Source: Diadema antillarum
Lineage: Eukaryota
Direction of reading: 5' to 3'
Length of the DNA stretch: 64,000 nt
Assembly (NCBI RefSeq): GCF_040938485.1
Contig: NW_027271449.1
Coordinates: 1,612,001 to 1,676,000, forward strand
In this document: one piece after another, positions 3,917-57,481 of the stretch
Numbering within the stretch: position 1 is the stretch's first letter
How the letters are laid out: each line of letters begins with the position of its first letter
Notes under the pieces: model-generated
What the model was told of the DNA's origin: nothing
Database searches by the model: none
What the model saw: only the letters and a program-made list of their open reading frames with translations
Made by a program: the position numbers and the translations under genes

Positions 3917-5342
3917 CAGTACTTGCTAACACTAAAGGAGCCACAAGATGGTATGGGAAACGTTTCTCAACATCATTATTCATGTTTCCCTGCAAATAAA
4001 ATTTGAGCTCGTATATGGACAATGATTATCATCACTGTTATGTTGTCAGTCAAAAGCAAACAAAGAAACAAACGAATACACAAACCATGACAAACAACAC
4101 TAAACAAATTTCTTAAAGGACTGTGGACTCCATTTTGTGAATGCACTTAACTGTAGGAAAATTTGATAAAGCTGCTATAATGTTGTCTTCTGGAAATTCC
4201 CGTAAGTAAAATTAGCACGCAGTTGTTCTTTGTTGAAGTATGTCTTGTAGCATTTTTCATTGTGTTATGATTGTACTTTGTTGAATTACATCTCTCAGCA
4301 TGGTGTGTTGTATGATGAAAATCATCTCGTAATCCGGTCACACATGTAACAAGGTCAAGGACGATTGTGGAGCAACACCATATCCACTTGGAATGAAAAC
4401 TGGATGACAGGAACTTCAGATCCACTCACATTTTTAATTCATTTCAGCAGTCTATATCTGAAGAGCGAAAATAGAGTGGTATGAAGAAATTCTATTGTAG
4501 GGTGGCTACGTAAAAAAGTGGAGATTAAGTTACATTAGTTCATACAAGACTATGCGATGAGCAAGAATGTGATATAGTACCAGTCTCCTTCCACACAGAT
4601 TGGTCCAACACAACAAAGGATCTTGGACCTAACTTTAAAAACCTTGGTTTGCCATGTACTCCCAGATTCCCATGTGAGGGCAAACTAATTTAACACATAA
4701 AAATCTGGGTTGCCTCTTCAAATAAACAACACGAAATCGTATGTTGGTGAAAGATTAGATGGAAGTGCTCTATGAACTCAGGAGAAATGTCAGAAATTTG
4801 CCACTGTGTGACACACAAATGTCAAATTCAGTCTTCAAGTGTAGCCAATCCAAGGATCATTTATAGAGATGGTGATTTAGAGGCCTTTGATGATTACTAC
4901 AACCAAAATAAGCATATAATGGTACAGGTATATGAACAAGATAGGGTTCAAACTCAGATAAATTATTCATTTTAGCAATGAAAGATTAAACGTATTAGAA
5001 AATACAACATCAGAACACGTATGTAGTTTCTGTGACTTTATGAGTTTGGTATATCAATAGTAGATGAAATCTAACTTCGAAATTAATCATCAAACAAGGG
5101 TCATTGTGGGGGTTGGGGATTGATTACACATAGCATGAGACAAAACAGACTTGGTATACAAGGATATGGATAAAAGCTACATCGAGGTCACATGAATGGT
5201 ATATAGTTACAGATAAATTGACTTCCAGATGTCATGGGATATATAGTGTAACATGATATCTTTATACCGAGTATGAGCCAGGTGATACAGACATACTGGG
5301 AACTCTTGGCACTGTGCCAGAGCACGATGGTTTGTTGTACAG

Positions 5343-6309
5343 TACAGTAGGACCTTGATTATCCGGCCACGATTATCCGACCGGTAGGTGTCCAGATAAT
5401 CGATTTGGCTGGATAAGAGAGATATGCTAAAATACAGCACTTTCTAGCATATCATGGTGGGGTATATATACACATGTTATTGCTAATTCACTAATATTAT
5501 GATAATCTGCATGGCATTGTCATGTTTCATACTCCACAAGTTGATAGGGAAACAAAATGAAATATAAGTAAAATATCCCTTCATTAACGTTCATTTGATT
5601 GATATTGACTGACAATGGCACCGATATTGTGACTCTTCGAATACTGCTGCTGCATTGCACTGTAACCAGTGCTGTGCACTTGGTGCCAGTGACAAGTGTG
5701 ACGCCAGTCATGGACATCGTGTCACATAGTGGCTTAAAGGGAGTGCATAGTTTTATTGAGACCTAACTTCCGGTTTCTAATATTTTTTGGTGAGATAATG
5801 AGAAACCTCTGATGAAACATGAGAGAGCATGTAATTCCAAAAGATATTCAACTTTAATTTGATGAATTTTTTTGTTAAATTACTGAGATATCAAAAAAGA
5901 GCATTTCTAATAAAAGGTGGTACCCATCTTTTAACAGGATCATTTTGTTTTTCTTTGTTTTTGGATGTCTCAGCGATTCCAAAACCAATTTTCATTTAAT
6001 AAACTTTGAATTCCTCTGAAAATGGTATGTTCTGTACTATTTCTTAAGTGTTTTCTTGGTATCTCGCAAAAAGTTAAAAGCCCAATTCTCATCTCCACCA
6101 ATACTATACCACCCCTTTTTAAATACTACAATCTACTGCGATGATTGGTATAAGTCCCGTCATGTATTCACATGATAATGGTTGAACATTTGTTTTGCTT
6201 TGAGTGAGATTTGTCACTGAAAATACATGAATACACTGTATATTAAAATGAATGTCAGCAAGTCGGCATCCGGACAACAGAGAATCCGGATAATCGAGGT
6301 CCTACTGTA
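5343..6309. mobile_element. Tc1/mariner-type MITE (TA TSD) containing a nested TTAA MITE
   Basis: TA|CAGTAGGACCTTGATTATCCGG ... CCGGATAATCGAGGTCCTACTG|TA; related copy at 31727-32109. Confidence 0.75.
5734..6122. mobile_element. Kolobok-type MITE (TTAA TSD, AGGG...CCCT ends), family A copy 1
   Basis: TTAA|AGGG ... CCCTTT|TTAA; homologous to 17036-17425 and 34327-34729. Confidence 0.75.
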
Positions 6310-33300: not shown

Positions 33301-33742
33301 CAAATTATTTACATTACTTGCATTTGCCTTTCCAGAGGGTTGCTTTTGATAAAATCAATTTAAACACAGGCAGCAATTCAGTAAAAATTTCTGGCTAATT
33401 TTTTTTCTTTCTTAGAGACTGTCATCATGATACATCATGATACATCATGATACATGATACATGACATGATACATGACATGACATGACTTGACATGATACA
33501 TGACATTTCATAAAGGAATACATCATTGCATTCTTTCTTCCCTAACCTTCTTGGAAGAAGACTAGCACAACACAGGCACAAATCTTCATCCCCTCCGCCA
33601 GCACCACCGCCGTGGAGCTGAGGTAGCGATGTCCCCCGGACTGCACGGTCCTGGAGTAGCGCATCGTCAGGACCAAGGAGGTGGTCTGCAGGATCAGGAT
33701 CCCCAGCGACAGGTACTTGAGGTTAAAGGTCACGGTGTTCAT
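22405..33742 (-). CDS. SLC35A3: Golgi nucleotide-sugar transporter, SLC35A3 (UDP-N-acetylglucosamine transporter)-like; 7 coding exons, 330 aa
   Basis: Exons 33742-33547, 32771-32614, 29175-29053, 26541-26373, 25175-25057, 22913-22780 and 22498-22405 all have GT-AG borders and compatible phases (993 nt). Peptide motifs match the SLC35A family: [80 protein letters not shown]. The N-terminus is closer to SLC35A3 than to SLC35A2, as I recall those sequences. Confidence 0.93.
22780..22913 (-). CDS. SLC35A3: SLC35A3 coding exon 6 ([21 protein letters not shown]...DFTPT)
   Basis: Acceptor cctcag|GCA; donor AG|gtaaga; 134 nt. Confidence 0.93.
23008..23100. mobile_element. 85-bp piggyBac-type mini-MITE copy 2
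   Basis: TTAA|CCCGTTGAGGACG ... CGTCCTCAACGGG|TTAA; perfect 13-bp TIR. Confidence 0.85.
23162..23526. mobile_element. GC-rich MITE (GACCCTGTTTAC TIR)
   Basis: GACCCTGTTTACACTG ... CACGGTAAACAGGGTC, with internal GGCCG/GCCCAG repeats. Confidence 0.65.
25057..25175 (-). CDS. SLC35A3: SLC35A3 coding exon 5 (AFFGILFG...TWVVVILQ)
   Basis: Acceptor tttcag|CT; donor CAA|gtaagt; 119 nt; contains NGFLQGY. Confidence 0.92.
25255..25577. mobile_element. CAG...CTG MITE with 7-bp TSD and GGTGGCCC subterminal repeats
   Basis: TIR CAGGGCTC(G/C)ACACTAA; TSD CATTAGG at 25248-25254 and 25578-25584; truncated relative at 57767-57890. Confidence 0.85.
25703..25775 (-). pseudogene. tRNA-derived sequence (SINE head or tRNA pseudogene)
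   Basis: Minus strand shows an A-box-like TAGCCTGGTGG and an intact T-arm GCGGG-TTCGATT-CCCGC; the acceptor stem does not pair properly. Confidence 0.6.
25905..26207 (-). mobile_element. Same 6-bp-TSD MITE family, copy 2 (inverted, in an SLC35A3 intron)
   Basis: Reverse-complement match to 3614-3916 over the full length; TSD AAGACA at 25899-25904 and 26208-26213. Confidence 0.88.
26373..26541 (-). CDS. SLC35A3: SLC35A3 coding exon 4 (MPAESK...WLRNIQL)
   Basis: Acceptor tttcag|ATG; donor G|gtaggt; 169 nt; contains [13 protein letters not shown]. Confidence 0.93.
28737..28902. mobile_element. Same 5-bp-TSD MITE family, empty copy
   Basis: CAGGGGCGGATCCAG ... CTGGATCTGCCACTG; TSD CTAAT at 28732-28736 and 28903-28907. 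Confidence 0.85.
29053..29175 (-). CDS. SLC35A3: SLC35A3 coding exon 3 ([10 protein letters not shown]...GVALVQ)
   Basis: Acceptor cgcag|GTG; donor CAG|gtgagg; 123 nt. Confidence 0.93.
30248..30328. repeat. (GT)n microsatellite
   Basis: Direct reading; similar arrays at about 14638 and 34812. Confidence 0.95.
31727..32322. mobile_element. Two abutting TA-type MITEs (31727-32109 and 32110-32322)
   Basis: CAGTTCGACCTCGATTATCCGG...CCGGATAATCGAGGTCGAACTG|TA, followed directly by a copy of the 21078 family. Confidence 0.7.
32614..32771 (-). CDS. SLC35A3: SLC35A3 coding exon 2 (GGRTIEG...DAATYQ)
   Basis: Acceptor gacag|GT; donor CAG|gtgagc; 158 nt. Confidence 0.93.
33423..33506. repeat. CATGA-based compound microsatellite
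   Basis: Units CATCATGATA, CATGATA and CATGA. Confidence 0.9.
33547..33742 (-). CDS. SLC35A3: SLC35A3 coding exon 1 ([10 protein letters not shown]...VFFQE)
   Basis: Acceptor tgtag|ATG; donor G|gttagg; phase 1 out. Confidence 0.92.
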
Positions 33743-43169: not shown

Positions 43170-45778
43170 TGGAAAATCATCACCATTTTAACCAGACCTT
43201 TAACCCTGTTGCCCAAAACTTTCTCTGTAGACTACAAGTATCTTTCCTTACACATTACACAATCATAAATTTATACAATATTTTATTTCACTAAATAAAT
43301 ATATCAAATCCCTTCCAAAACATACAAAAATATGTTTAAAAAAATTACAACGTCAACACCAAACAAACATACAACCCAACCTTCAGCTCTATAACCCACG
43401 CTTTCAAAAACACACTTAAACAAACACACATGTTGTCGCACAGTAAGATACATTTAACAAATTTTCTAAGAATACTGAGCCACTTGGTCATTGAAATACA
43501 TTGCATTACAGTGCTCTGTAAAAAAAAAAAAAAAAAAAAAATGAAACTCTAACATTTCACCTGACTCTTGATTTCTGCCCCATGATCCCATATTTATAGA
43601 AAATATAGCCATAGGGCGTTTGTCTACTTTCGTTTCATATGTCCAGAGGCCCCAAGCCCTGGCCCCAGCCATCCCAAGCTGTGGCTCAGGCATGGGTGAG
43701 GATGGACCCGGATAGGGCCCTCCTTGAAATGACTACGGCTCCAGCCTTAGGTTGGGGCAGGGGCCTACTAAGGCAATGTCCCTGCACCTTAGCCTCTGCC
43801 TAGATATGACTCACATTTTCCACCCAGATATTTCAAACAAGATGTGGAGCCAACCAAACCCTGGCAGGGGCCCGGACCAGATGGTCCCCTTAGTTGACAG
43901 GGCTGCCAACACTGGAAACTAGTTGAGAGTGAGACTCCCATAGGCCAATGCTATAATTTAGGAGTCAAAATGTGTGAGATCAATAGAAATGCATGCAAAT
44001 GAAATGCATTTCTAGAGTTTTAGAGTGAGAAAGGACCAAAATGCGTGAGAGTTGGCAGCCCTGAGGGGAGTCCTCAATAATTGCGACCCAGAGACATGTC
44101 TGGACCCGAACTTTGTGTACTGAGTAGTCGCGACTCAGGACGTGGGCAATGTCTGGAAGCTTGCCCTGGGTATTCACCCAAAATAAGCCTCCAGTTATAT
44201 AGATGGGCATTGGCAGGCTCTGCTCTACCACCTCAACCACCCCCAGATGATGGGGCTCAGTGAGGTCAGTCTCAACTTCACTGTGCCTCCCAGCAGTGGC
44301 CAGACCAAGAGAACCTATTCAGGGCTCTCCTGGAACTGGGCACCAGGGGAAGGATTTCAATCCTTCATCTCAGATGTGTTGGAGATCAGACTGGGGTCCA
44401 TGCCATCAGCCACCCCCTTCTCAAGTGGCACTGCCCTGGAGACCAGCTAGTCTACCACTCCTTCAGTGGAGATGGTCTCCAGGTTAGAGCCTGGACAGCC
44501 CTATTCCCCTATTGCTGTTTTGGGGTGTCGGTGCTAGTCCAATCCCTGCCAGATCCCAGAGACCAGCAGTGAGGGAGATCCCCCTAGATCGCCTGATCTC
44601 GGAGACGGAAGCAGCCCACCTCGCCCCTCACCCAAGGCATGCATTATAACATGCCATGCTTCCTGGGTGATGTTGGCAGGTTGGTGGCCAACATCCGGGG
44701 TCTCCTTCTGGCCCGACTGATGGCAGTTACGACTGCCAATACCCAAGGCTATACAGGTACTAATAACCCCTGCATTCCATAATTCATATAGGGAAAACCA
44801 CCTTTGTGTATAGTAGGCATACTGTACAGACGGATATATGTATGTTTAATGAATGGGAAAGTCAACCTAAGAAAATGATTATGAGAGTTTTTCTTTTTGT
44901 ATTTTAAGGTATTGAAGGGTTATGTTTTTGTTAATACTTTTCTGTAAGGTGGATATTTCTGCGGTTACTTGCAATAGTCTGTTGGAGGCTAAGGCTGACA
45001 TTTCTATATATTCTGAAATCTCCCAAGGGTCTCTGGGTTGAGGGCTTCTTTGGGCTCAGCTGAAAACCCCTTCACGTATTTCAGAGGACTAGGTCTATTC
45101 TAGACCGAGAAGTCTGCTTGACGAACTGAGCCGGACTGTAAAGATAATACCCAAGTGGAAGGCCACTTCACAGTCAGCCCTACGGATGCCCTAGAGCTCC
45201 CCCCTCCCCCAATGACTAAGGGCATATATGGATATATGGAGAACGTTAGCCTTTATTATTCATGTTGAATTTTGAATTTTGTCAAAGTTAGGTATTATAA
45301 GTGGAAGTCACTTATCTTATGTCAGAAATATTTGGGTTTTGCCCTGGGTGCCCATAAAGTAACATGTCGGGTTCAGGCAAATCTAGTTCAAGACTACATT
45401 ACATATCTCGGCAACAGGTAAATTTTGAAGTCCTGAGTTATTATGCTGCACGTTCGACTCATGTCAGGGCATGCTAAGTTTGTATATTGTTCAAATGCAT
45501 AAACCCATCTAAATGATGAGATGATGGATAAGGCATCAAATGTCACAGTGCCAGTTTGATCGTATGCAGCTGGCACTAGGCAGTGACTAAATAACAAGCA
45601 TTGTCATTTTGGATTTCTGAGTGAAATGCAATTTTTTTTTTTGTAATTTTGTGTGGTACAGGCATGTATTGAATAATAGTAATTTCACTAATGCCAAGTA
45701 ATTACCAATTGCAATTTATAGTATTATAGCGAGTAGAAAATACTCTAGAAAACACAATACACATACATAATACACTAA

Positions 45779-45932
45779 CGTTAGACAGAAAGATCCGTCT
45801 GTCCGGAGGAGACTTTTATTTTTTTGACATTAACGCTCTCTCGGGGATCTGTAAAGTCAGACACAGTCTTCGCAGAACATATCCCCGACGACTAGATACA
45901 TGTACAGACCAAGACCGATCTTTCGGTCAACA
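45779..45932 (+). repeat. Dispersed repeat with an inverted relative at 50592-50780 and a fragment at about 59350-59390
   Basis: Shared AGACAGAAA(G/A)ATC(C/T)GTCTGTCC and GACCGATCTTTCGGTCAA blocks. Confidence 0.6.
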
Positions 45933-46512
45933 CACACACATACACACATACACACTAGTCACTACTCAATTCAAACAAACTGTATAAGAGTTCTAATGAG
46001 ATAATGACATCTTCACCAAAGAGGAGAGAAGTAAATAAAATTGTACATGTGAATTGACGTTCTAACTAAATTTATATAGATCTACTGTGTACAGTGTGAG
46101 TAAAAACCACCAGACTATTAACACTAACAGTAACACTACACTCTACTTGGACTGGAGTTGGACGAGCCGGATAGCCCGACCACCACAGGCACCAGAGGCA
46201 GAGCTCCAGTCATAAAGACGCTGAAGATGCTAGATGCGACTTCTGAATTCTGTACAATACAGCGACATGACACAGCACAGGCAGCGGCATAACCCCGTCG
46301 CGGGGCGCTGTAACACAGTAACAGTACGGTACGTATTTGTCCGTATGGGGTCGCTGCTGCGGTTAGCAGCGGCAGAGCAGGAGGGCCAGGGCCGGGCGGG
46401 CGCTAACACTGCACTGCCGTCACTGGATCTGGAGAGGACTAGCACGAGTCTATTATTAATCTACGACCACAAGACACGACAAGTTATGGTAACAAATGTC
46501 ATACTAACTTAC

Positions 46513-46620
46513 TTTTGTTGGTGATTTGAATTACATGCGTACTCAGAAATCAAGCTCAGCCTCAGCTACATAGCGCACAGCAACACAAGACGACCTGCCT
46601 GGTTTGTGTTATTACAGCTC
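46513..46620 (-). other. SLC35A3: Probable non-coding first exon of SLC35A3 (5' boundary approximate)
   Basis: Strong minus-strand donor AA|gtaagt at 46512 in a CpG-rich island. The first coding exon starts at an acceptor directly before the ATG, so an upstream exon is required. Confidence 0.55.
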
Positions 46621-46727
46621 GCGGTATACATACAAATATACAGGAATTATACATACAGGAATTCCCGTATGTGGGTACGTGGATTGTAGTTACTAGTACA
46701 GTTACGTGGCCTTGTTTAGCTTTGTTT
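46620..46727. promoter_or_regulatory. Left part of a putative bidirectional SLC35A3/ATPAF1 promoter
   Basis: Lies between divergent first exons. Carries an ACTACAA (ZNF143/THAP11-type) motif on the minus strand at 46684-46690. A YY1-like GCGCCATCT lies at 49021-49029 on the other side of the insertion. Confidence 0.5.
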
Positions 46728-46754
46728 CAGTGCCGTATTTAATATACGGCACTG
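46728..46754. mobile_element. 27-bp fused-termini remnant of the adjacent hAT-like element
   Basis: CAGTGCCGTAT (first 11 nt of the left TIR) joined to TTAATATACGGCACTG (last 16 nt of the right TIR), flanked by CTTTGTTT on both sides (46720-46727 and 46755-46762). Confidence 0.85.
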
Positions 46755-46762
46755 CTTTGTTT

Positions 46763-49003
46763 CAGTGCCGTATATTAAGAGAGTCTGGCCAACTCATAAA
46801 TTGAACGCCATGTCGTTACCCAGCGTACAGTGCGCTTATGGTTTTAGCGTGTGCGCTTTGGGGTTAGCGCAGGCGTCCCAAAGGCGCAAGGCACTGTGTT
46901 GCTTGACTTTTTTTTTATAGAGAGAGAGAGAGAGAAAGGGTGTAGGCTGGGGGAGGGACATTCATTCATTCCATCCATGTTGAACAAAGCCAACAATCAA
47001 TCATTTTTACACATTCAAATAGACACAAGCACACAGGTGTATAAACAATAGGGAAGCTGTTTAAAGGACATAATTCCTGAATATAGACAAATATGATAAA
47101 TTATTGCTGTATAAATAAAAGAAGAATTCACAGTATGTCGTGTCGTAAACTTTCACTAGACTGTAGGCCCCTATGCTATATTGCATATTTAGAAAGTTGT
47201 CCAGGGAACAAGAATATTGTATAACAAAATGATGCAATATATATATTTACAATTCTAGCGGTGCGCAGACGATAGACGAATTTCACAGTTTTACTGTTTC
47301 GCACATAAATAACCATCAATTACCATCCTATTTAGTACCATAAACTGACATGAAGGCCTACTAGTATAAGTAGGCCCTAATTCAAGAGGAATACACCTAT
47401 GTACAATGTGTGAAACGTCATCGGCAAGTGCATAATAAATGGTATGTGAAATGATCACAAATTGTTTAAAAATAATTTCAAAAAAAGACCTTTAATTGAA
47501 CAATTGAACAAACACAAGTACCTGGATAATACAATAATCATGAGGGATATAATATCCTCGGTGACATCCGTACCAAATATAAACTATGATCAGGACCATT
47601 GAATGGATATGAAATGAGTTTAAAAAAATAAAAATGTCCAAATGGCGACCTGTATACCTCCGCCATATTACATTGTTCTTAGCAGATGTAGAGTACGCCT
47701 TGACAATGTTACACGACAGTTTCACATATTATCGGCAGAAAAATTTGTCACAAAATTTAATGCGTCGAGTGTTTACTTTCCTTGAACTAGGTGTAAATTG
47801 ATGAGTTTTATTTAAAAGAGAAGTATTAAGGAATTTGAACATTTTTTACTCGTAAGTTGACCAATCTATTTTCATGGCAATACTTTAAGCGGTTATTTTA
47901 CAAATCTGCGGAAATTACTGTCATTTTAGTATTTTTACTTGACCTTTGACCATCTTGGCCAAAATCTTTCCCTATGTCATGCATCATTGTATAGTATAAT
48001 GGTGGCATGCAAATACCGCGTTTGGTTTTAAGTTTGTGCATTGGGTATAATCTCCAAGGTATGGATGAACTGGGTAATAATATTTCAACAATAGATAGTA
48101 GAATTTTAACATTTTAACATTTTACCTGACATCGATCCTTGACCTTTGCCACCTCCCATCATAACCCCCAACCCCAACCCCCCCCCCCCAAAAAAAAAAA
48201 AAAAAAATCACAAGAGAATCACGGTCGGGCAATAAGTTTCGTCTGGAAATACATGTACTCACCTTCAGAAATTGTATACAGATATGGGGGAAATGGCTGT
48301 ATTTTAAGATTTTAACCAGTATGATTTTGACCGTTCACTTTGAGCATGTTTACACACTATGCTAAAAAAAAACTTCGTCCACTCCCACATGCACACAATC
48401 ATGTAAAGTTTCATGGCCAACGGTTTCAACAAAATTGATCACGAATGAAGGACAGACAAATGCCTCAGGCGACACTTCGTACGTTATAGCGGTGACAAAC
48501 AATCTTAATGTGAATCAAAACTTGGATAGTCTGAAAGACACCGCGAGGAATCCAAAGAAAAAAAAATCATATAGTTTCCCGTCACATCACTCTAATTTCC
48601 CACTTCTTTCATTCGTTGTGGATCTGTCGGAAAGCGGTGCATCATTACACTTGAGCCAGGTCGGTTAGCGTAACGCCATGCTGCGCAGGAAAGGCATGAC
48701 GAATTTTCAGTTTATCGCAGTAAGATATCAAAATATCTTTCGCATACTTCAATGACATAGACAACGGCAAGGACACTGCACCGCGACTGATATTGGGGAT
48801 TTCCCAAAGGCAAGCAATATTAACGCGTAGCTGCGCATGTTCAACAATGGGCACTGCGTATGAACTCTCCTCACGCCCGCGTGATTGACTTTGGTAACGA
48901 CATGGCGCCTGTAGATCACGGGACCAGCTTTTGACCAATCACAGGCTTCAAAACACATAAGCCGAAAACCGAGTTGGCCAGACTCTCTTAATATACGGCA
49001 CTG
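46763..49003. mobile_element. Non-autonomous hAT-like DNA transposon, 2241 bp
   Basis: Perfect 33-bp TIRs (CAGTGCCGTATATTAAGAGAGTCTGGCCAACTC at 46763-46795; reverse complement at 48971-49003). 8-bp TSD CTTTGTTT at 46755-46762 and 49004-49011. No transposase ORF. Confidence 0.9.
47510..48510 (+). mobile_element. Helentron/HINE-like non-autonomous element nested in the hAT-like element (boundaries approximate)
   Basis: TGACCTTTGACC-type motifs, a GACAGACA remnant and a terminal stem-loop-like end near 48460-48500; same architecture as the other HINE-like elements here. Confidence 0.45.
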
Positions 49004-49046
49004 CTTTGTTTATAGTAAGCGCGCCATCTACGATCTCTTTTCGTCA

Positions 49047-49252
49047 ATGACCTCGAAAACGAAAATGGCTTTTGCCCGTGCTAACGTCGGCTGCAGACAA
49101 TTATGTTCACGATTTCGGCATCAGGGGTTTTCCGAATTATGGCGGACTCTGACATTGTCTTCCATGGTATCTGGGGCACAGGATGACGAATCTTCCATAG
49201 AGAAGAACGCTTTTTACGCTAAGTATGCAGACAAGATAAAGAAGCTTCAGAG
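49047..49252 (+). CDS. ATPAF1: ATPAF1 exon 1
   Basis: ATG at 49047; donor AG|gtgagc. Confidence 0.9.
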
Positions 49253-52200
49253 GTGAGCCATAAAAACCGCGAGGTATTCCCAGCTCTGGCATCAGCTCTA
49301 GCCAGTTATACTGGCCGCGCATGCATTGCCATTGAAGCACGCACGTGCGCCCCATGGTATGGCCAAAGCAGTATGCCCAGCGGACAGCGGACAGCTGACT
49401 GGCCGGCCGGCCAGCTGACTGTGCTGCTGTGTCAGCAAGAAGGTGCTGCTGAGGCCAGTGAGGGCCCCTGAAATCCAAATGCATGTTGATTTGTGTTGAT
49501 TTATGATACTCTCAACATCAGTTTTGCGGTGAAACGAATATCTAGTAGAAACATTCCATATATTTTCGATGATTTTTTCTTTTCTTTTTCTTCAGATTAC
49601 TTGGGAACGCCCACAAAAAAAGGCCTTCCAAACCAAATATTCCTCAGAATCAGATGACCTCGTCTGTCAATCATTGCTAAACTAAAGTACTGAAATGTTT
49701 AACAAAAGACGTTGGAATGCACCTTCCCCTCGACTCAGCATAACTTGCATGTTCCCTCGCCATGTCTTTTGTTAGTCACAATAACAATATCACAGAAACA
49801 TGCAAATTCTGCTGAGTCGAGGGGAAGGTGCATTCCAATGTCTTTTAATTGTTTGTTAAACATTTCAGTACTTGGCAATTTGCATGTTGATTGACACGGA
49901 ATGACAGATGAGGTCATCTGAGGAATATCGGTTTGGAAGGATTTTTTGGAGGCATTCCTGAGTAATCTGAATTGAAAAATAGAAGAAAAAATCATTAAAA
50001 ATATTATGTGGAATGTTTCTTGATATTTGTTTCACTGCAAAAGTGATGTTGAGCGAGGGTATCATAAATCAACACAAATCAACAATGCATTTGGATTTCA
50101 GGGGCCCTTTAAATGTATTAGAGCGCTGTTGCTCATACTTGTACTTCGCTGGGCGATGATGGGTCGGGCCTTGCTATTTCTGTCCTCCAAAATTGAGGGG
50201 GTTGATGCTTTCCTCGGCTCTAGTGATTATTCTCAGAAGTAAAACCTTTGTCAAATTCAGCGAATTATCCAATTAAAATGCATGCTTTAGTTTTTTATAT
50301 CGGTATCCACGTCAATGATTACCCCCTGCCCCCGTTTTTTGTTTGTTTGTTTGTTTTTTTGCCCATCCAAGACTAGTAGGGTGTCAAGTTTTTGTTCAAT
50401 ATTCAGGAATTGTGTTAATCTCCTACCTCTAACTTGTAATGTTAGTTTTGAGAAGGCACAAGTAGACTCTACATGTACAATGTGAATACAAAATGTAGAG
50501 AGCTGTAAAGCAAGCTGCCCATACACATGTAATTTGACTGCCAGCTACTTGTACTGTTTAAAAAACCTATGGGATGTGGACACCTAGGTCCTTGACCGAA
50601 AGATCGGTCTGTATATGGTCATCGGGTAGACCCCCTATATGTTCCGCGGGGACTGCATCTGGCTTCATGGAAGCCCCTCCTATATGTCTATGGAGGAGAA
50701 GAGAGCTGATAAAGTAAAAAAAAATGATAGAATTGAAAGACTCCTCTGCACTGGACAGACAGATTTTTCTGTCTTACATTTTTTGTACTCTTACATTAAT
50801 TTGTAGGTCCCTATGCTTCTGCATGTGGTCAAATTTTGTCAGAGGTCAAACCTTGTGTGGGTTTTGTAATCTCTCCCAAAGCAAAGAAAACAGGAACAAA
50901 TTTACTGTACCAGGTATACAGAAACAAAATACAGAAATTCATTTCGTGTGCCATGTGACAAAAAAAGGAAGGTGACAATTGTTGGAGGCATACCTGTGAG
51001 CTAGAAGATGGAAAATAAATTTTGCTGCAACTTACAAGCCATCGAGCTAGGGTATCCCCATTACAGGCCTCACTCAGTATGTCCTTGATGTGGAATTATG
51101 TTACTTTACTCTTCTCAAATTTACCACCAGCTCAGAACCTGAAGTTTTCCAGTCCAGGCTAGACATGGCAAAGGAAGCAAAGAAGAAGAAGGCTGCAAGT
51201 TCCGCACAAAGTGCCAAGCAATCGGTCAGCGCAGGATTGTTTTTATTTTAGTGTCATCTTTTTATTTTTTTACTCATGCATAATTTCTTGATGAGGTAAT
51301 TGCAACAAAATTATTGTCATGTCTTAGACATAAATGTACATATAGTACATGTCATGAGAGGGGAATAATGTGATGGTTTTATATAAATCTATGCACAAAG
51401 CAATCCTTGAGAGTGAAACTTTTTTTTTTAAATTTAAAATGTTGATATTTGGATTTTATTCTGGTGTGTTTCACTTTAGTGCACTGTACTCTTGTGCATG
51501 CATTTATTTTACCAATACACTCTACATCAGGTAACAAAATGTTGTATCCCAGCCATTTTGAGCTGCATTCAAATGTTGTAGATGCCAGGTCCTATTGTTC
51601 TCTCTATGCCAAAGCCATAACAAGATATGCTCCTTTCTTTAGACATCAGTGACTTGTTTTGTTCTAACATGATAACGACCTGGCAGTCAGACAGAGTTCC
51701 ACTTCAGTATAAGTTTGTTTTTGTGCATGGTTAGCAGCACAATGCATTTGTCACCTCAGTTGCCAGTTGAGGAAACTTGTGAATGCATTTCTAATACCAA
51801 GTAGTTCAATCTTGCTCACCTCTCAAAAAATTTCTGGTTAGTAGTGAGTGCATCAAAATAGTATTGTACACCCAAGCAGATTATTTTTTTCTGTAATCCT
51901 TAGACACATTGCCAAAATGTTTTTTTTTTCATATTTGTTCAGCTGTCAGATACTCCAAGCCCCCCTCAAATGAAGCCAGGAGAGTCACAAGGGCAGAAAG
52001 TAAGTATACACCACAACTATTGAATAATGTCATAGTTGTATGAAAGGGCTTTTTGTTTTTAAGAGGCATTAAGAGATACAGGATTTGGGAGTTTACAGAT
52101 AAATTTGCAGTTTTGTCCTTCAAGACAATACTTTTGTAGAGAACCAAGAGTGAAGATAAATGTGTAACCATGCTCACACACTTGCACATACAGCATTGCC

Positions 52201-55200: not shown

Positions 55201-57481
55201 ACTTTATTGTATAAGATCCATTCACCATTGTCTTCCTACCTTAAAGGGGATAACTAGTAACTGATCAGTGGGAATCAATGGGAATGCTGGGGGATGATTG
55301 TTCCAATCCTTGTGGGATTCATTTAACAGTACATTACATATCTACTGTTGTGTGAAAATTATTTGCTTCAGAATGGTCTCATATTCAAGTATATATGCAA
55401 TTTAAGGCCCTGTCACTGTACAGGCATGCTACCCTGGAAATATTAAACTGCACATTACTTGAATATGAGACCATTCTGAAGCAAATGATTTTCACACAAC
55501 AATAGATATATAATGTACTCTTAAATGAATCCCACAAGGATTAGAACAATCATCCTCCAGCATTCCCACTGATTCCCACTGATCAGTTACTAGCCATCCT
55601 CCAACAGAGGGTTTCCAGTTTAAGATTGATTTCTCTTTGCCCGTGACTTCCTAAGATTCTCTTACTTAACCTGTTGAGGACAAGTCGTGAGTATATTCTG
55701 GCAAGCGTCTTTGGGAAATGTGTGTTGTAGCAAAATCAAACCGTCTTCAACGGGTGTTGTTGAGTTTGGTTTAGTAATCATAGATCATCGAAGGGAATTT
55801 ATACCGTAGGGGTATATGGGTGGGGATACGATAGTTGGAAAGGATATTTGTCAGTAGTGTGTGAACTCACTTAAAGGTAATGGCTGAAAGTAGACTCACA
55901 TTTAATAGATGCTTTGCTTTCTCACAGAATATAAATGTTTTTGTTCATTCCTGACACAGGCCTACCAAGAAAACACACCTGCCCTACTCACAATTACTCA
56001 TTATCCAGAACTGCAAGAAGAAAAAGGTACAAATCCTTGTTTCATTCATACCAGAGCAATAAAGCATAGTGCTACTGGTAAAGCTATTTTCGTAATACTC
56101 TAATATGAACCTTGTTGTTGTTGTTGTGTTGGTTTTAATGGCGTGTATCACTCAAGACTGAGTATTACGTATAAACAGAACCTGTTTGTTATACATTTAG
56201 CCTTTGTTCAAGGCCCTCTTGCTGTAGTATTTTCAAGTGTACAGAGCGTAGACACTGCATGCAGTTACATTCTTGTCTGTGCTTTTATTTTCACAGATTT
56301 TTTGAGTCGAGTGATATCCACAGAATCAATTATTCATGAGAATATTGCCTTCTGTAACGAAAATACAATGCATATCTTGATATAAGTTTGGAGATAACTA
56401 TTTTAATTTTCATGAAAATTTTTTCCTGATTTATCATTCCTCGACTGGGGGTTTTCATCACAAATTCAATCACCTGTAAACCTGTCTTACAAGGCCCAAT
56501 ATGTAAACTGTCATAGTGGCAAAGCACATGGCCAGTTCAACATTTAGTTGCAGATTCCCTTCATTGATTAAAAGTTGACATTGCAAGGATTTGGGGGAGG
56601 ATTCAAGGGTTAGTGCTATGACTTACATACATACATACTTGTAGTATATTCTGATGGAATCCTTTATTTTCTTTTCTTTTTTAAAATTGAATCTCTATTT
56701 TCAAACCTTTCGATATGAACCTTTTAGGAATTGTGCTGATGCGAGGGGAGATGGACACAAAGTTAGTGGTAAGTCGGTCTTCAACCAACTCATTCTGTCT
56801 TAGCAGTAATGCTATTTAGCGAAAGAAATATAGTACTCCAGTATACTAATTGCTCTATGAATCAGGAAAACTATAATGCAATAAAGCAAGATTTACATCA
56901 ACAGTTTTAACTGTGAATTTACTGTGCCATTGGAAAATTGTTTTTATATTGCCTGCAATATTTAACGCGTTGAGGACGAATCCCGAGTATACTCGGGCTG
57001 GTGTCTATGGGAAATGTGTGTTGTAGCAAAATCAAACCGTCCTAAATGGGTTAATTTTGTGTGCAATATCTGAAATTTACTATGTACTTGTACTTACTGG
57101 TATACAAATATAGTAAGACACATTAATTATGCAAATGATGTAGGATGTCAGTTTGCCTGGCGCTAAATTATATGCACATTATACAGACAAAGACACATAC
57201 CAACACACACATAAACTTACAGTATCTATTTGGGGTTGGATGGTATAACATGGGATCATTCAACAGTAGTCAAAATATTGCATGTACGTGCAATCCATTC
57301 TCCTTTCATTTCCCAGTCTGTCCAAGATGCTCAGTTCTTTGCCAACCAACTTCAGCTGTACTACGCCACCGAGGACGCCGCCCGCCAACAGTTGCTAAGC
57401 GACTTCAACCGACGCCCAGCAGATTTCAAGCACATGGACCTTATAGCCCAGCTCTCAAACACGGCCGTCGGCCTTGGCTGA
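49047..57481 (+). CDS. ATPAF1: ATP synthase mitochondrial F1 complex assembly factor 1 (ATP11 family); 10 exons, 295 aa
   Basis: Exons 49047-49252, 51131-51224, 51943-51999, 52581-52643, 53363-53413, 53901-53948, 55041-55136, 55960-56026, 56728-56768 and 57317-57481 are in phase (888 nt). Motifs: [67 protein letters not shown]. The Arg-rich N-terminus resembles a mitochondrial presequence. An alternative start at 49065 has a better Kozak context. Confidence 0.93.
49461..50113. mobile_element. Fold-back TTAA-type MITE in ATPAF1 intron 1
   Basis: About 80-bp TIRs (AGGGCCCCTGAAATCCAAATGCAT...; right end CCCCT|TTAA) plus a second inner inverted pair (about 49630-49770 vs 49795-49945). Confidence 0.75.
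51131..51224 (+). CDS. ATPAF1: ATPAF1 exon 2 ([12 protein letters not shown]...AKQS)
   Basis: Acceptor accag|C. The donor TCG|gtcagc is weak and was chosen for phase. Confidence 0.75.
51943..51999 (+). CDS. ATPAF1: ATPAF1 exon 3 ([19 protein letters not shown])
   Basis: ttcag|CTG ... AAA|gtaagt; 57 nt. Confidence 0.8.
52581..52643 (+). CDS. ATPAF1: ATPAF1 exon 4 ([21 protein letters not shown])
   Basis: caccag|AGC ... CAG|gtgagt. Confidence 0.92.
53363..53413 (+). CDS. ATPAF1: ATPAF1 exon 5 ([17 protein letters not shown])
   Basis: tacag|ATA ... CCT|gtaagt. Confidence 0.92.
53901..53948 (+). CDS. ATPAF1: ATPAF1 exon 6 ([16 protein letters not shown])
   Basis: ttcag|AGT ... ATG|gtgagt. Confidence 0.92.
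54256..54590 (+). repeat. 45-bp minisatellite (about 4 units) interrupted by a Harbinger-type MITE (54415-54572)
   Basis: Unit starts at 54256, 54301, 54346 and 54391; unit 4 resumes (GATTTGGTCTTTAGATAT) after the GGGCCC...GGGCCC element. Confidence 0.85.
55041..55136 (+). CDS. ATPAF1: ATPAF1 exon 7 ([14 protein letters not shown]...VINYQ)
   Basis: cccag|TTC ... CAG|gtgagt. Confidence 0.93.
55241..55604. mobile_element. Palindromic TTAA-type MITE in ATPAF1 intron 7
   Basis: TTAA|AGGGGATAACTAGTAACTGATCAGTGGGAATC... with a nearly complete reverse-complement arm of about 150 bp. Confidence 0.8.
55666..55755. mobile_element. 85-bp piggyBac-type mini-MITE copy 3 (opposite orientation)
   Basis: TTAA|CCTGTTGAGGAC...CCGTCTTCAACGGG; right TSD decayed. 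Confidence 0.7.
55960..56026 (+). CDS. ATPAF1: ATPAF1 exon 8 ([22 protein letters not shown])
   Basis: cacag|GCC ... G|gtacaa. Confidence 0.92.
56728..56768 (+). CDS. ATPAF1: ATPAF1 exon 9 ([14 protein letters not shown])
   Basis: tttag|GA ... GTG|gtaagt; 41 nt. Confidence 0.92.
56962..57054. mobile_element. 85-bp piggyBac-type mini-MITE copy 4 (opposite orientation)
   Basis: TTAA|CGCGTTGAGGACG...CGTCCTAAATGGG|TTAA. Confidence 0.75.
57317..57481 (+). CDS. ATPAF1: ATPAF1 exon 10 ([17 protein letters not shown]...AVGLG*)
   Basis: cccag|TCT; TGA at 57479-57481. Confidence 0.93.

What the first reader, a model, noticed from the sequence alone, without database searches (positions are those of the whole stretch)
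46513..49065. A young 2.2-kb transposon appears to split a compact bidirectional promoter of two housekeeping genes, ending 43 bp upstream of the ATPAF1 start codon
Seen: perfect 33-bp TIRs and an intact 8-bp TSD (CTTTGTTT) define an element at 46763-49003, so it is probably recent. Only 35 bp separate the right TSD from the ATPAF1 ATG at 49047. Removing the element and its remnant puts the putative SLC35A3 exon-1 donor (46513) about 250 bp from that ATG. An ACTACAA motif lies on one side and a YY1-like motif on the other. Established: ACTACAA/ZNF143-type motifs are typical of bidirectional housekeeping promoters, and ATP11/ATPAF1 is needed for F1 assembly. Inference: this allele cut ATPAF1 off from its shared promoter, so ATPAF1 transcription must start within about 35 bp, start inside the element, or splice it out.
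Basis: partly seen in the sequence, partly recalled or inferred. Interest (0 to 1): 0.8.

Follow-up and report, generated by a model that had tools for sequence, protein, structure and literature searches.

The report
Polymorphic hAT-like transposon at ATPAF1 start
A 2.2-kb non-coding cut-and-paste transposon sits 43 bp upstream of the ATPAF1 start codon on this haplotype, other read sets of the same species carry the clean empty site, and its effect on ATPAF1 or on the divergent neighbour SLC35A3 could not be tested.

Summary
Perfect 33-bp inverted ends (46763-46795, 48971-49003) and the 8-bp duplication CTTTGTTT bound a 2241-bp element with no protein domain. CAGTG tips, the 8-bp duplication and repeated tip motifs fit a non-autonomous hAT-type transposon.

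New here: assembled contigs from one, probably two, other samples of the same species join 46718 directly to 49003. That is the exact empty site with one CTTTGTTT, so the insertion is real, recent and not fixed.

A 27-bp stub of the same ends and a third CTTTGTTT lie next to it, so the target was probably hit twice.

The "split bidirectional promoter" reading is only partly supported. SLC35A3 coding starts 12.8 kb away (33742, minus strand), directly after a splice acceptor, so an upstream non-coding exon must exist. The donor at 46512/13 is the best candidate. One distant relative (L001) keeps the two genes head to head, 1.19 kb between start codons. The ACTACAA motif is weak evidence.

No RNA data could be reached, so transcription starts and any expression effect are untested.

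Earlier notes of this scan report other transposons at gene starts in this genome. This is an ordinary kind of event in a useful natural allele pair.

The parts
46763..49003 (.). 2241-bp non-autonomous hAT-like DNA transposon
   Evidence: Perfect 33-bp inverted ends. No other copy in the window. No ORF above 97 aa, and the five longest have no Pfam match. The family is high-copy in read sets of organisms A and B.
46763..46795 (+). Left terminal inverted repeat, tip CAGTG
48971..49003 (-). Right terminal inverted repeat
46806..46820 (.). Subterminal 15-nt repeat, inverted partner at 48893-48907; probable transposase-binding region together with repeated CAGTGC motifs
46720..46727 (.). Target duplication CTTTGTTT, copy 1
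46728..46754 (.). 27-bp stub made of 11 nt of the left end and 16 nt of the right end of the same element
   Evidence: I3, D2.
46755..46762 (.). Target duplication, copy 2
49004..49011 (.). Target duplication, copy 3
46513..46718 (-). Native DNA left of the insertion: candidate non-coding exon 1 of SLC35A3 and its proximal promoter (donor AAA|GTAAGT at 46512/13). Inferred, not shown.
   Evidence: It is the best minus-strand donor in native DNA between 44000 and 49046. CpG observed/expected is about 1 or more here.
49012..49046 (+). 35 bp of native DNA kept next to ATPAF1: YY1-like AGATGGCGC on the minus strand (49021-49029) and a pyrimidine run CTCTTTTC (49035-49042)
49047..49253 (+). ATPAF1 exon 1, with in-frame ATGs at 49047 and 49065 and a donor at 49254
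   Evidence: ATP11 Pfam match on the last exon, 57230-57478.
33545..33742 (-). First coding exon of SLC35A3; a pyrimidine tract and AG lie directly upstream of the ATG

Best explanation
A non-autonomous cut-and-paste transposon of the hAT type, moved in trans by a transposase encoded elsewhere, recently inserted at the 8-bp target CTTTGTTT. The target lies in the CpG-rich DNA between the divergent genes ATPAF1 (plus strand) and SLC35A3 (minus strand). The insertion is on the assembled haplotype only; the ancestral empty site still segregates in the species.

The same 8-bp target was used twice. One copy was later reduced to a 27-bp stub, most simply by abortive gap repair after excision. The full copy sits in the neighbouring duplicate of the target.

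The insertion leaves ATPAF1 with 43 bp of native upstream DNA before ATG 49047, or 61 bp before the better ATG 49065. Everything further upstream is moved 2.28 kb away.

Shown: the anatomy, the empty allele, the gene identities and the divergent order. Inferred: that this DNA is a shared promoter, that SLC35A3 exon 1 ends at 46513, and that ATPAF1 on this allele starts inside the retained 43-61 bp. If it does, its core promoter survives and only upstream elements are displaced.
For: - Terminal repeats and target duplications.
- Tips CAGTG with an 8-bp duplication, plus subterminal repeats of the tip motif.
- No coding capacity.
- Empty allele: X1 contig record 3 (821 nt) maps to 46366-46718 and 49003-49489 with contiguous contig coordinates (475/476). 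X2 record 16 (949 nt) ends its listed piece at 46718 with 97 letters left, exactly the distance from 49003 to that run's contig break at 49100.
- The overlap between the two junction sides is 9 nt, far shorter than the 31-letter words the runs' contigs are indexed by, so the assembler should not have made this join without reads that span it (inference).
- Family depth is in the thousands against about 20 for the flanks.
- CpG observed/expected is 0.89 in the element, 0.485 in the window and 1.3-1.7 around the insertion point.
- Splice acceptor directly before the SLC35A3 ATG, here and in L001.
- L001 keeps ATPAF1 exons 1-2 and the SLC35A3 coding exon head to head, with start codons 1.19 kb apart.
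- No protein domain in the ten long ORFs scanned between 33.8 and 46.2 kb.
- hAT elements such as Hermes and TcBuster are discussed in connection with nucleosome-free regions (papers listed, not read in detail).
Against: - No RNA evidence of any kind. No RNA run was listed, and X15 covers only repeats.
- The filled allele itself was not seen in independent reads.
- The X2 tail piece is inferred from lengths, not listed.
- The target CTTTGTTT fits the hAT consensus nTnnnnAn at only one of the two positions (consensus from my own knowledge).
- No transposase partner was identified.
- Nine other loci, L002-L011 from about five relatives' SLC35A3 variants, show no ATP11 exon upstream of SLC35A3.
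- The intergenic DNA does not align between the window and L001.
Confidence: 0.75

Rival explanations
1. The DNA is only the one-directional ATPAF1 promoter. SLC35A3 starts at another non-coding exon somewhere between 33.8 and 46.5 kb, and the GTAAGT at 46512 is a chance match. The element then affects ATPAF1 alone, if anything.
For: The donor is 12.8 kb from the coding exon. GTRAGT is a short motif. Other CpG-rich patches exist at 37.2-37.6 and 40.6-41.2 kb. Most relatives examined lack the pairing.
Against: L001 has both genes 1.19 kb apart, so its non-coding exon must lie beside ATPAF1. 46512 is the best minus-strand donor in native DNA between 44.0 and 49.0 kb. No other gene is detectable in the interval.
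Confidence: 0.3
2. The filled state is old, and the empty allele arose by loss of the element, for example by slippage or recombination between the 8-bp direct repeats.
For: Three tandem copies of CTTTGTTT could support such a deletion. The state in organisms B and C was not resolved.
Against: The ends and duplications are perfect and the element's CpG content is high. hAT excision normally leaves footprints (my own knowledge). An 8-bp repeat is a poor substrate for exact loss of 2.28 kb.
Confidence: 0.07
3. The element belongs to another superfamily that makes 8-bp duplications (P, Merlin or a Mutator relative), not hAT.
For: 33-bp terminal repeats are long for hAT. The target fits nTnnnnAn only in part. 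No transposase was seen.
Against: The YARNG tip (CAGTG) and the repeated subterminal tip motifs are typical of hAT (consensus from my own knowledge).
Confidence: 0.12
4. The insertion is an assembly artefact.
For: Contigs of X1 and X2 show only the empty junction in the listed pieces.
Against: A mis-join would not create an exact 8-bp target duplication at the exact ends of a perfect inverted repeat.
Confidence: 0.03

Closest known systems
Non-autonomous hAT elements (Ds of maize; hAT-Charlie-type passengers of animals)
   Same: 8-bp target duplication, CAGTG-type tips, subterminal repeats of the tip motif, no transposase, many copies, and internally deleted derivatives.
   Different: The terminal repeats are 33 bp, longer than usual. 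No autonomous partner was identified. The adjacent stub is only 27 bp and shares a target duplicate with the full copy.
Promoter-proximal insertion polymorphisms of DNA transposons (P element, Ac/Ds, Hermes, TcBuster)
   Same: Landing in open, CpG-rich DNA just upstream of a housekeeping gene, and segregating presence/absence alleles.
   Different: The effect on expression is untested here. The site lies between two divergent genes.
Bidirectional promoters of head-to-head housekeeping genes (PMC3082894)
   Same: Divergent genes, CpG-rich DNA without a TATA consensus, and an arrangement kept in one distant relative.
   Different: Transcription starts are unknown. There is no intact ZNF143 site. 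Human ATPAF1 and SLC35A3 are not neighbours (my own knowledge).

Membership tests
hAT superfamily transposon | 8-bp target site duplication | tested here: met
   CTTTGTTT at both flanks, identical 8/8.
hAT superfamily transposon | Terminal inverted repeats beginning YARNG | tested here: met
   The tips read CAGTG. The arms are 33 nt and perfect.
hAT superfamily transposon | Target consensus nTnnnnAn | tested here: inconclusive
   CTTTGTTT has T at position 2 but T, not A, at position 7. The consensus is weak and is recalled from my own knowledge.
hAT superfamily transposon | Transposase with RNase-H-like core and hAT dimerisation domain, in this copy or in a partner with the same ends | not testable with these tools
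   This copy has no ORF above 97 aa and no Pfam match. The rest of the genome could not be searched.
Bidirectional promoter | Two genes on opposite strands, 5' ends facing | tested here: met
   ATPAF1 is on the plus strand from 49047. SLC35A3 exons are on the minus strand from 33742 downwards.
Bidirectional promoter | Transcription starts less than 1 kb apart | not testable with these tools
   No RNA run was available. The figure of 249 bp rests on an inferred donor.
Bidirectional promoter | Arrangement conserved in other species | tested here: inconclusive
   Present in L001, with 1.19 kb between the start codons. Not seen in L002-L011.
ZNF143/THAP11 site (ACTACAA plus SBS) | ACTACAA followed by the SBS core NNCCCR | tested here: not met
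   The sequence reads ACTACAA then TCCACG. The heptamer occurs 20 times in the window. The core requirement comes from PMC3082894.
YY1/TISU element | ATGGCG core just downstream of the start, in the direction of transcription | tested here: inconclusive
   AGATGGCGC is unique in the window but lies on the minus strand, pointing away from ATPAF1. The ATG at 49065 has only AAAATGGCT. The location rule comes from PMC2518114.

The most novel reading that the evidence does not exclude
The element's ends carry their own outward-facing promoter modules: an ATGGCG box about 44 and 97 bp from the tips, and a CCAAT box about 65 bp from the right tip. Such copies would replace the upstream promoter DNA they displace. 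That would explain why this genome tolerates so many transposons at gene starts, and why the same 8-bp promoter target was hit twice.
Probability: 0.1. Interest if true: 0.6.

Novelty: new member of a known kind. Interest (0 to 1): 0.3.

Why it matters
A segregating filled/empty pair at the 5' end of an essential mitochondrial assembly gene is a ready-made natural experiment. Allele-specific expression in heterozygotes would show how much upstream DNA a housekeeping promoter needs, and whether a divergent gene pair really shares it. Apart from that, it is an ordinary insertion polymorphism in a very heterozygous, transposon-rich genome.

Tried and rejected
**RNA evidence, all routes blank**
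- The run search listed no RNA run.
- X15, of unknown kind, covered only repeats.
- An exact look-up of the ATPAF1 exon-1 ORF found nothing.
- A word search with the same ORF found nothing.
- A word search with SLC35A3 exon 1 gave at best 73% identity, so this species is not held at exon level.

- Looking up the spliced full-length proteins. They have no reference and would have had to be typed.

**Comparative work**
- Nine further loci from relatives showed no ATP11 exon upstream of SLC35A3.
- A word search with L001's ATPAF1 exon found only itself.
- The intergenic DNA of L001 and the window does not align.
- A shared CCACGTA 7-mer is within chance (my estimate is about four shared 7-mers for two 250-bp stretches).

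**Other checks that led nowhere**
- Pfam found nothing on the five longest element ORFs or on ten long ORFs in the 33.8-46.2 kb interval.
- Rfam gave only a sub-threshold mir-341 match.
- The CpG scan does not single out one promoter.
- A findings search by sequence was blank.

The hit list included human and other vertebrate SLC35A3 fragments. I fetched and compared none of them.

Full report
**1. The observation**

The sequence is as described.
- Two 33-nt arms, 46763-46795 and 48971-49003, are perfectly complementary.
- A 23-nt tip pattern occurs only at these two places in the window, with none expected in shuffles.
- CTTTGTTT flanks the element on both sides (46755-46762 and 49004-49011).
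- The element is 2241 bp with 38.6% G+C, and the window holds no other copy.
- Its end lies 43 bp before the ATG at 49047.

**2. What the element is**

- It has no ORF above 97 aa, and the five longest have no Pfam match.
- The tips read CAGTG, which fits the YARNG rule of hAT elements (consensus from my own knowledge). The duplication is 8 bp.
- A 15-nt subterminal repeat lies 44 nt from the left tip and 97 nt from the right tip. The tip motif CAGTGC recurs in both subterminal regions.
- In read sets of two closely related organisms, the summed contig depth over the element is hundreds to thousands, against about 20 for the flanks. It is highest at the two ends.

I read it as a non-autonomous hAT-like element of an abundant family. 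No partner transposase could be sought.

**3. The empty allele (new evidence)**

Contigs of four public runs were laid on 45251-51250.
- In X1 (organism A), one 821-nt contig covers 46366-46718 with its letters 476-821 and covers 49003-49489 with its letters 1-475. It therefore joins 46718 directly to 49003 and has one CTTTGTTT, no stub and no element.
- The two sides of that join share only 9 nt, far fewer than the 31-letter words of the index. I infer that the assembler should not have made the join without reads that span it.
- In X2 (another sample and study), a 949-nt contig ends its listed piece at 46718 with 97 letters to spare. That is exactly the distance from 49003 to the run's contig break at 49100, so X2 very probably has the empty site too. 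This step is inferred.
- Whether these samples also carry the filled allele cannot be told from contigs.
- The state in organism B (X5) was not resolved. Its ATPAF1 exon 1 differs from the window at 4 of 194 letters.

The insertion is therefore not fixed. Together with the perfect ends and a CpG observed/expected of 0.89 against 0.485 for the window, it is young.

**4. The stub**

Between 46720 and 46762 lie CTTTGTTT, then 27 bp made of 11 nt of the left end and 16 nt of the right end, then CTTTGTTT again.

hAT excision does not leave element tips behind (my own knowledge). The stub is therefore best read as a copy that lost its interior through aborted gap repair. The triple duplication means the same 8-bp target was used twice. 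One cycle could account for both features: excision, abortive repair at the donor site, and re-insertion of the excised copy into the neighbouring target duplicate. This is inference.

**5. The genes**

ATPAF1:
- Exon 1 runs from 49047 to 49253 on the plus strand. Exon 2 is near 51120-51230, and the last exon matches Pfam ATP11.
- There are two in-frame ATGs. The one at 49065 has A at -3 and G at +4, and it lines up with the start of the relative's protein.

SLC35A3:
- It lies on the minus strand, with a first coding exon at 33545-33742 and further exons down to 22779.
- A pyrimidine tract and AG stand directly before its ATG, so a non-coding exon must lie upstream.
- Ten long ORFs between 33.8 and 46.2 kb were scanned and none matches a protein domain.
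- The donor AAA|GTAAGT at 46512/13 is the best minus-strand donor in native DNA between 44.0 and 49.0 kb.

**6. Comparative test**

A Logan contig from an unidentified relative (L001) carries both genes.
- ATPAF1 exon 1 is on one strand (ATG at 4159) with exon 2 at 2399-2286.
- The SLC35A3 coding exon is on the other strand (ATG at 5351), so the start codons are 1.19 kb apart.
- A pyrimidine tract and AG again stand directly before the SLC35A3 ATG. Candidate donors lie 200-240 bp from the ATPAF1 ATG.

The divergent pairing is therefore inherited, and in that species it is compact. Nine other loci from relatives (L002-L011) show Notch/ankyrin genes or nothing upstream. The intergenic DNA itself does not align.

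**7. Motifs**

- ACTACAA (46684-46690, minus strand) occurs 20 times in the window against 12.6 expected. It is followed by TCCACG rather than the ZNF143 core NNCCCR. PMC3082894 shows that the submotif acts only together with that core.
- AGATGGCGC (49021-49029) is unique in the window, but it is on the minus strand. YY1/TISU boxes lie just downstream of the start, in the direction of transcription (PMC2518114), so it would fit a minus-strand start better than ATPAF1.
- No TATA consensus is present. CpG observed/expected peaks at 1.3-1.7 around the insertion point.

**8. Consequences for the filled allele**

- ATPAF1 keeps 43 bp of native upstream DNA before ATG 49047, or 61 bp before ATG 49065.
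- A start inside the retained 43-61 bp seems most likely. A start inside the element's CpG-rich right end is possible. Neither was tested.

**9. Limits**

- No RNA data were reachable.
- The spliced full-length proteins have no reference, so they were not looked up.
- Earlier notes name the genome Diadema antillarum. I did not verify this.
- For that species, PMC13511894 reports 2.52% heterozygosity, many heterozygous structural variants of 1 kb or more, and an RNA-supported NCBI annotation. That annotation is the obvious place to settle the open points.

**10. Verdict**

This is a real, recent, segregating hAT-like insertion in the shared 5' region of a conserved divergent gene pair. It is an ordinary kind of event. 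The promoter-splitting reading is plausible and unproven.

Noticed in passing
window 46281-46373: An 85-bp stretch (46281-46365) is absent from the X2 contig, which joins 46280 to 46366. It is a 76-77-bp hairpin-forming element (-38.7 kcal/mol) flanked by an 8-9-bp direct repeat GCAGCGGC(A). Its depth in the read sets is very high. It looks like a second polymorphic miniature transposon, about 230 bp from the candidate donor.
   Followed up: partly
window 49451-50250, 45651-45850, 50451-50650: Very high-copy repeats, with summed depth up to 38,000 against about 20 for unique DNA. The one in ATPAF1 intron 1 shows many opposite-strand joints, as a foldback element would.
   Followed up: no
L001 3968-5548: An unidentified relative keeps ATPAF1 and SLC35A3 head to head, with 1.19 kb between start codons and the same acceptor-before-ATG structure in SLC35A3.
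   Followed up: partly
window 49047-49067: ATPAF1 has two in-frame ATGs 18 nt apart. The second has the strong context and matches the relative's start, so the first may lie in the 5' leader.
   Followed up: partly
window 49100: The A>T variant in X1 changes codon 18 of the exon-1 ORF (Gln to His). It could serve as a marker for allele-specific expression.
   Followed up: no
window 48262 (minus), 47852 and 48720 (plus), 49004-49015: The element carries consensus splice donors on both strands. The target duplicate plus ATAG just right of the element resembles a splice acceptor, so parts of the element could be spliced into or out of transcripts.
   Followed up: no
window 46905-46945 and 48157-48210: A (GA)n run and a poly-C/poly-A tract lie inside the element. 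Depth falls in its middle (47251-47650), which suggests a composite interior shared by fewer copies than the ends.
   Followed up: no
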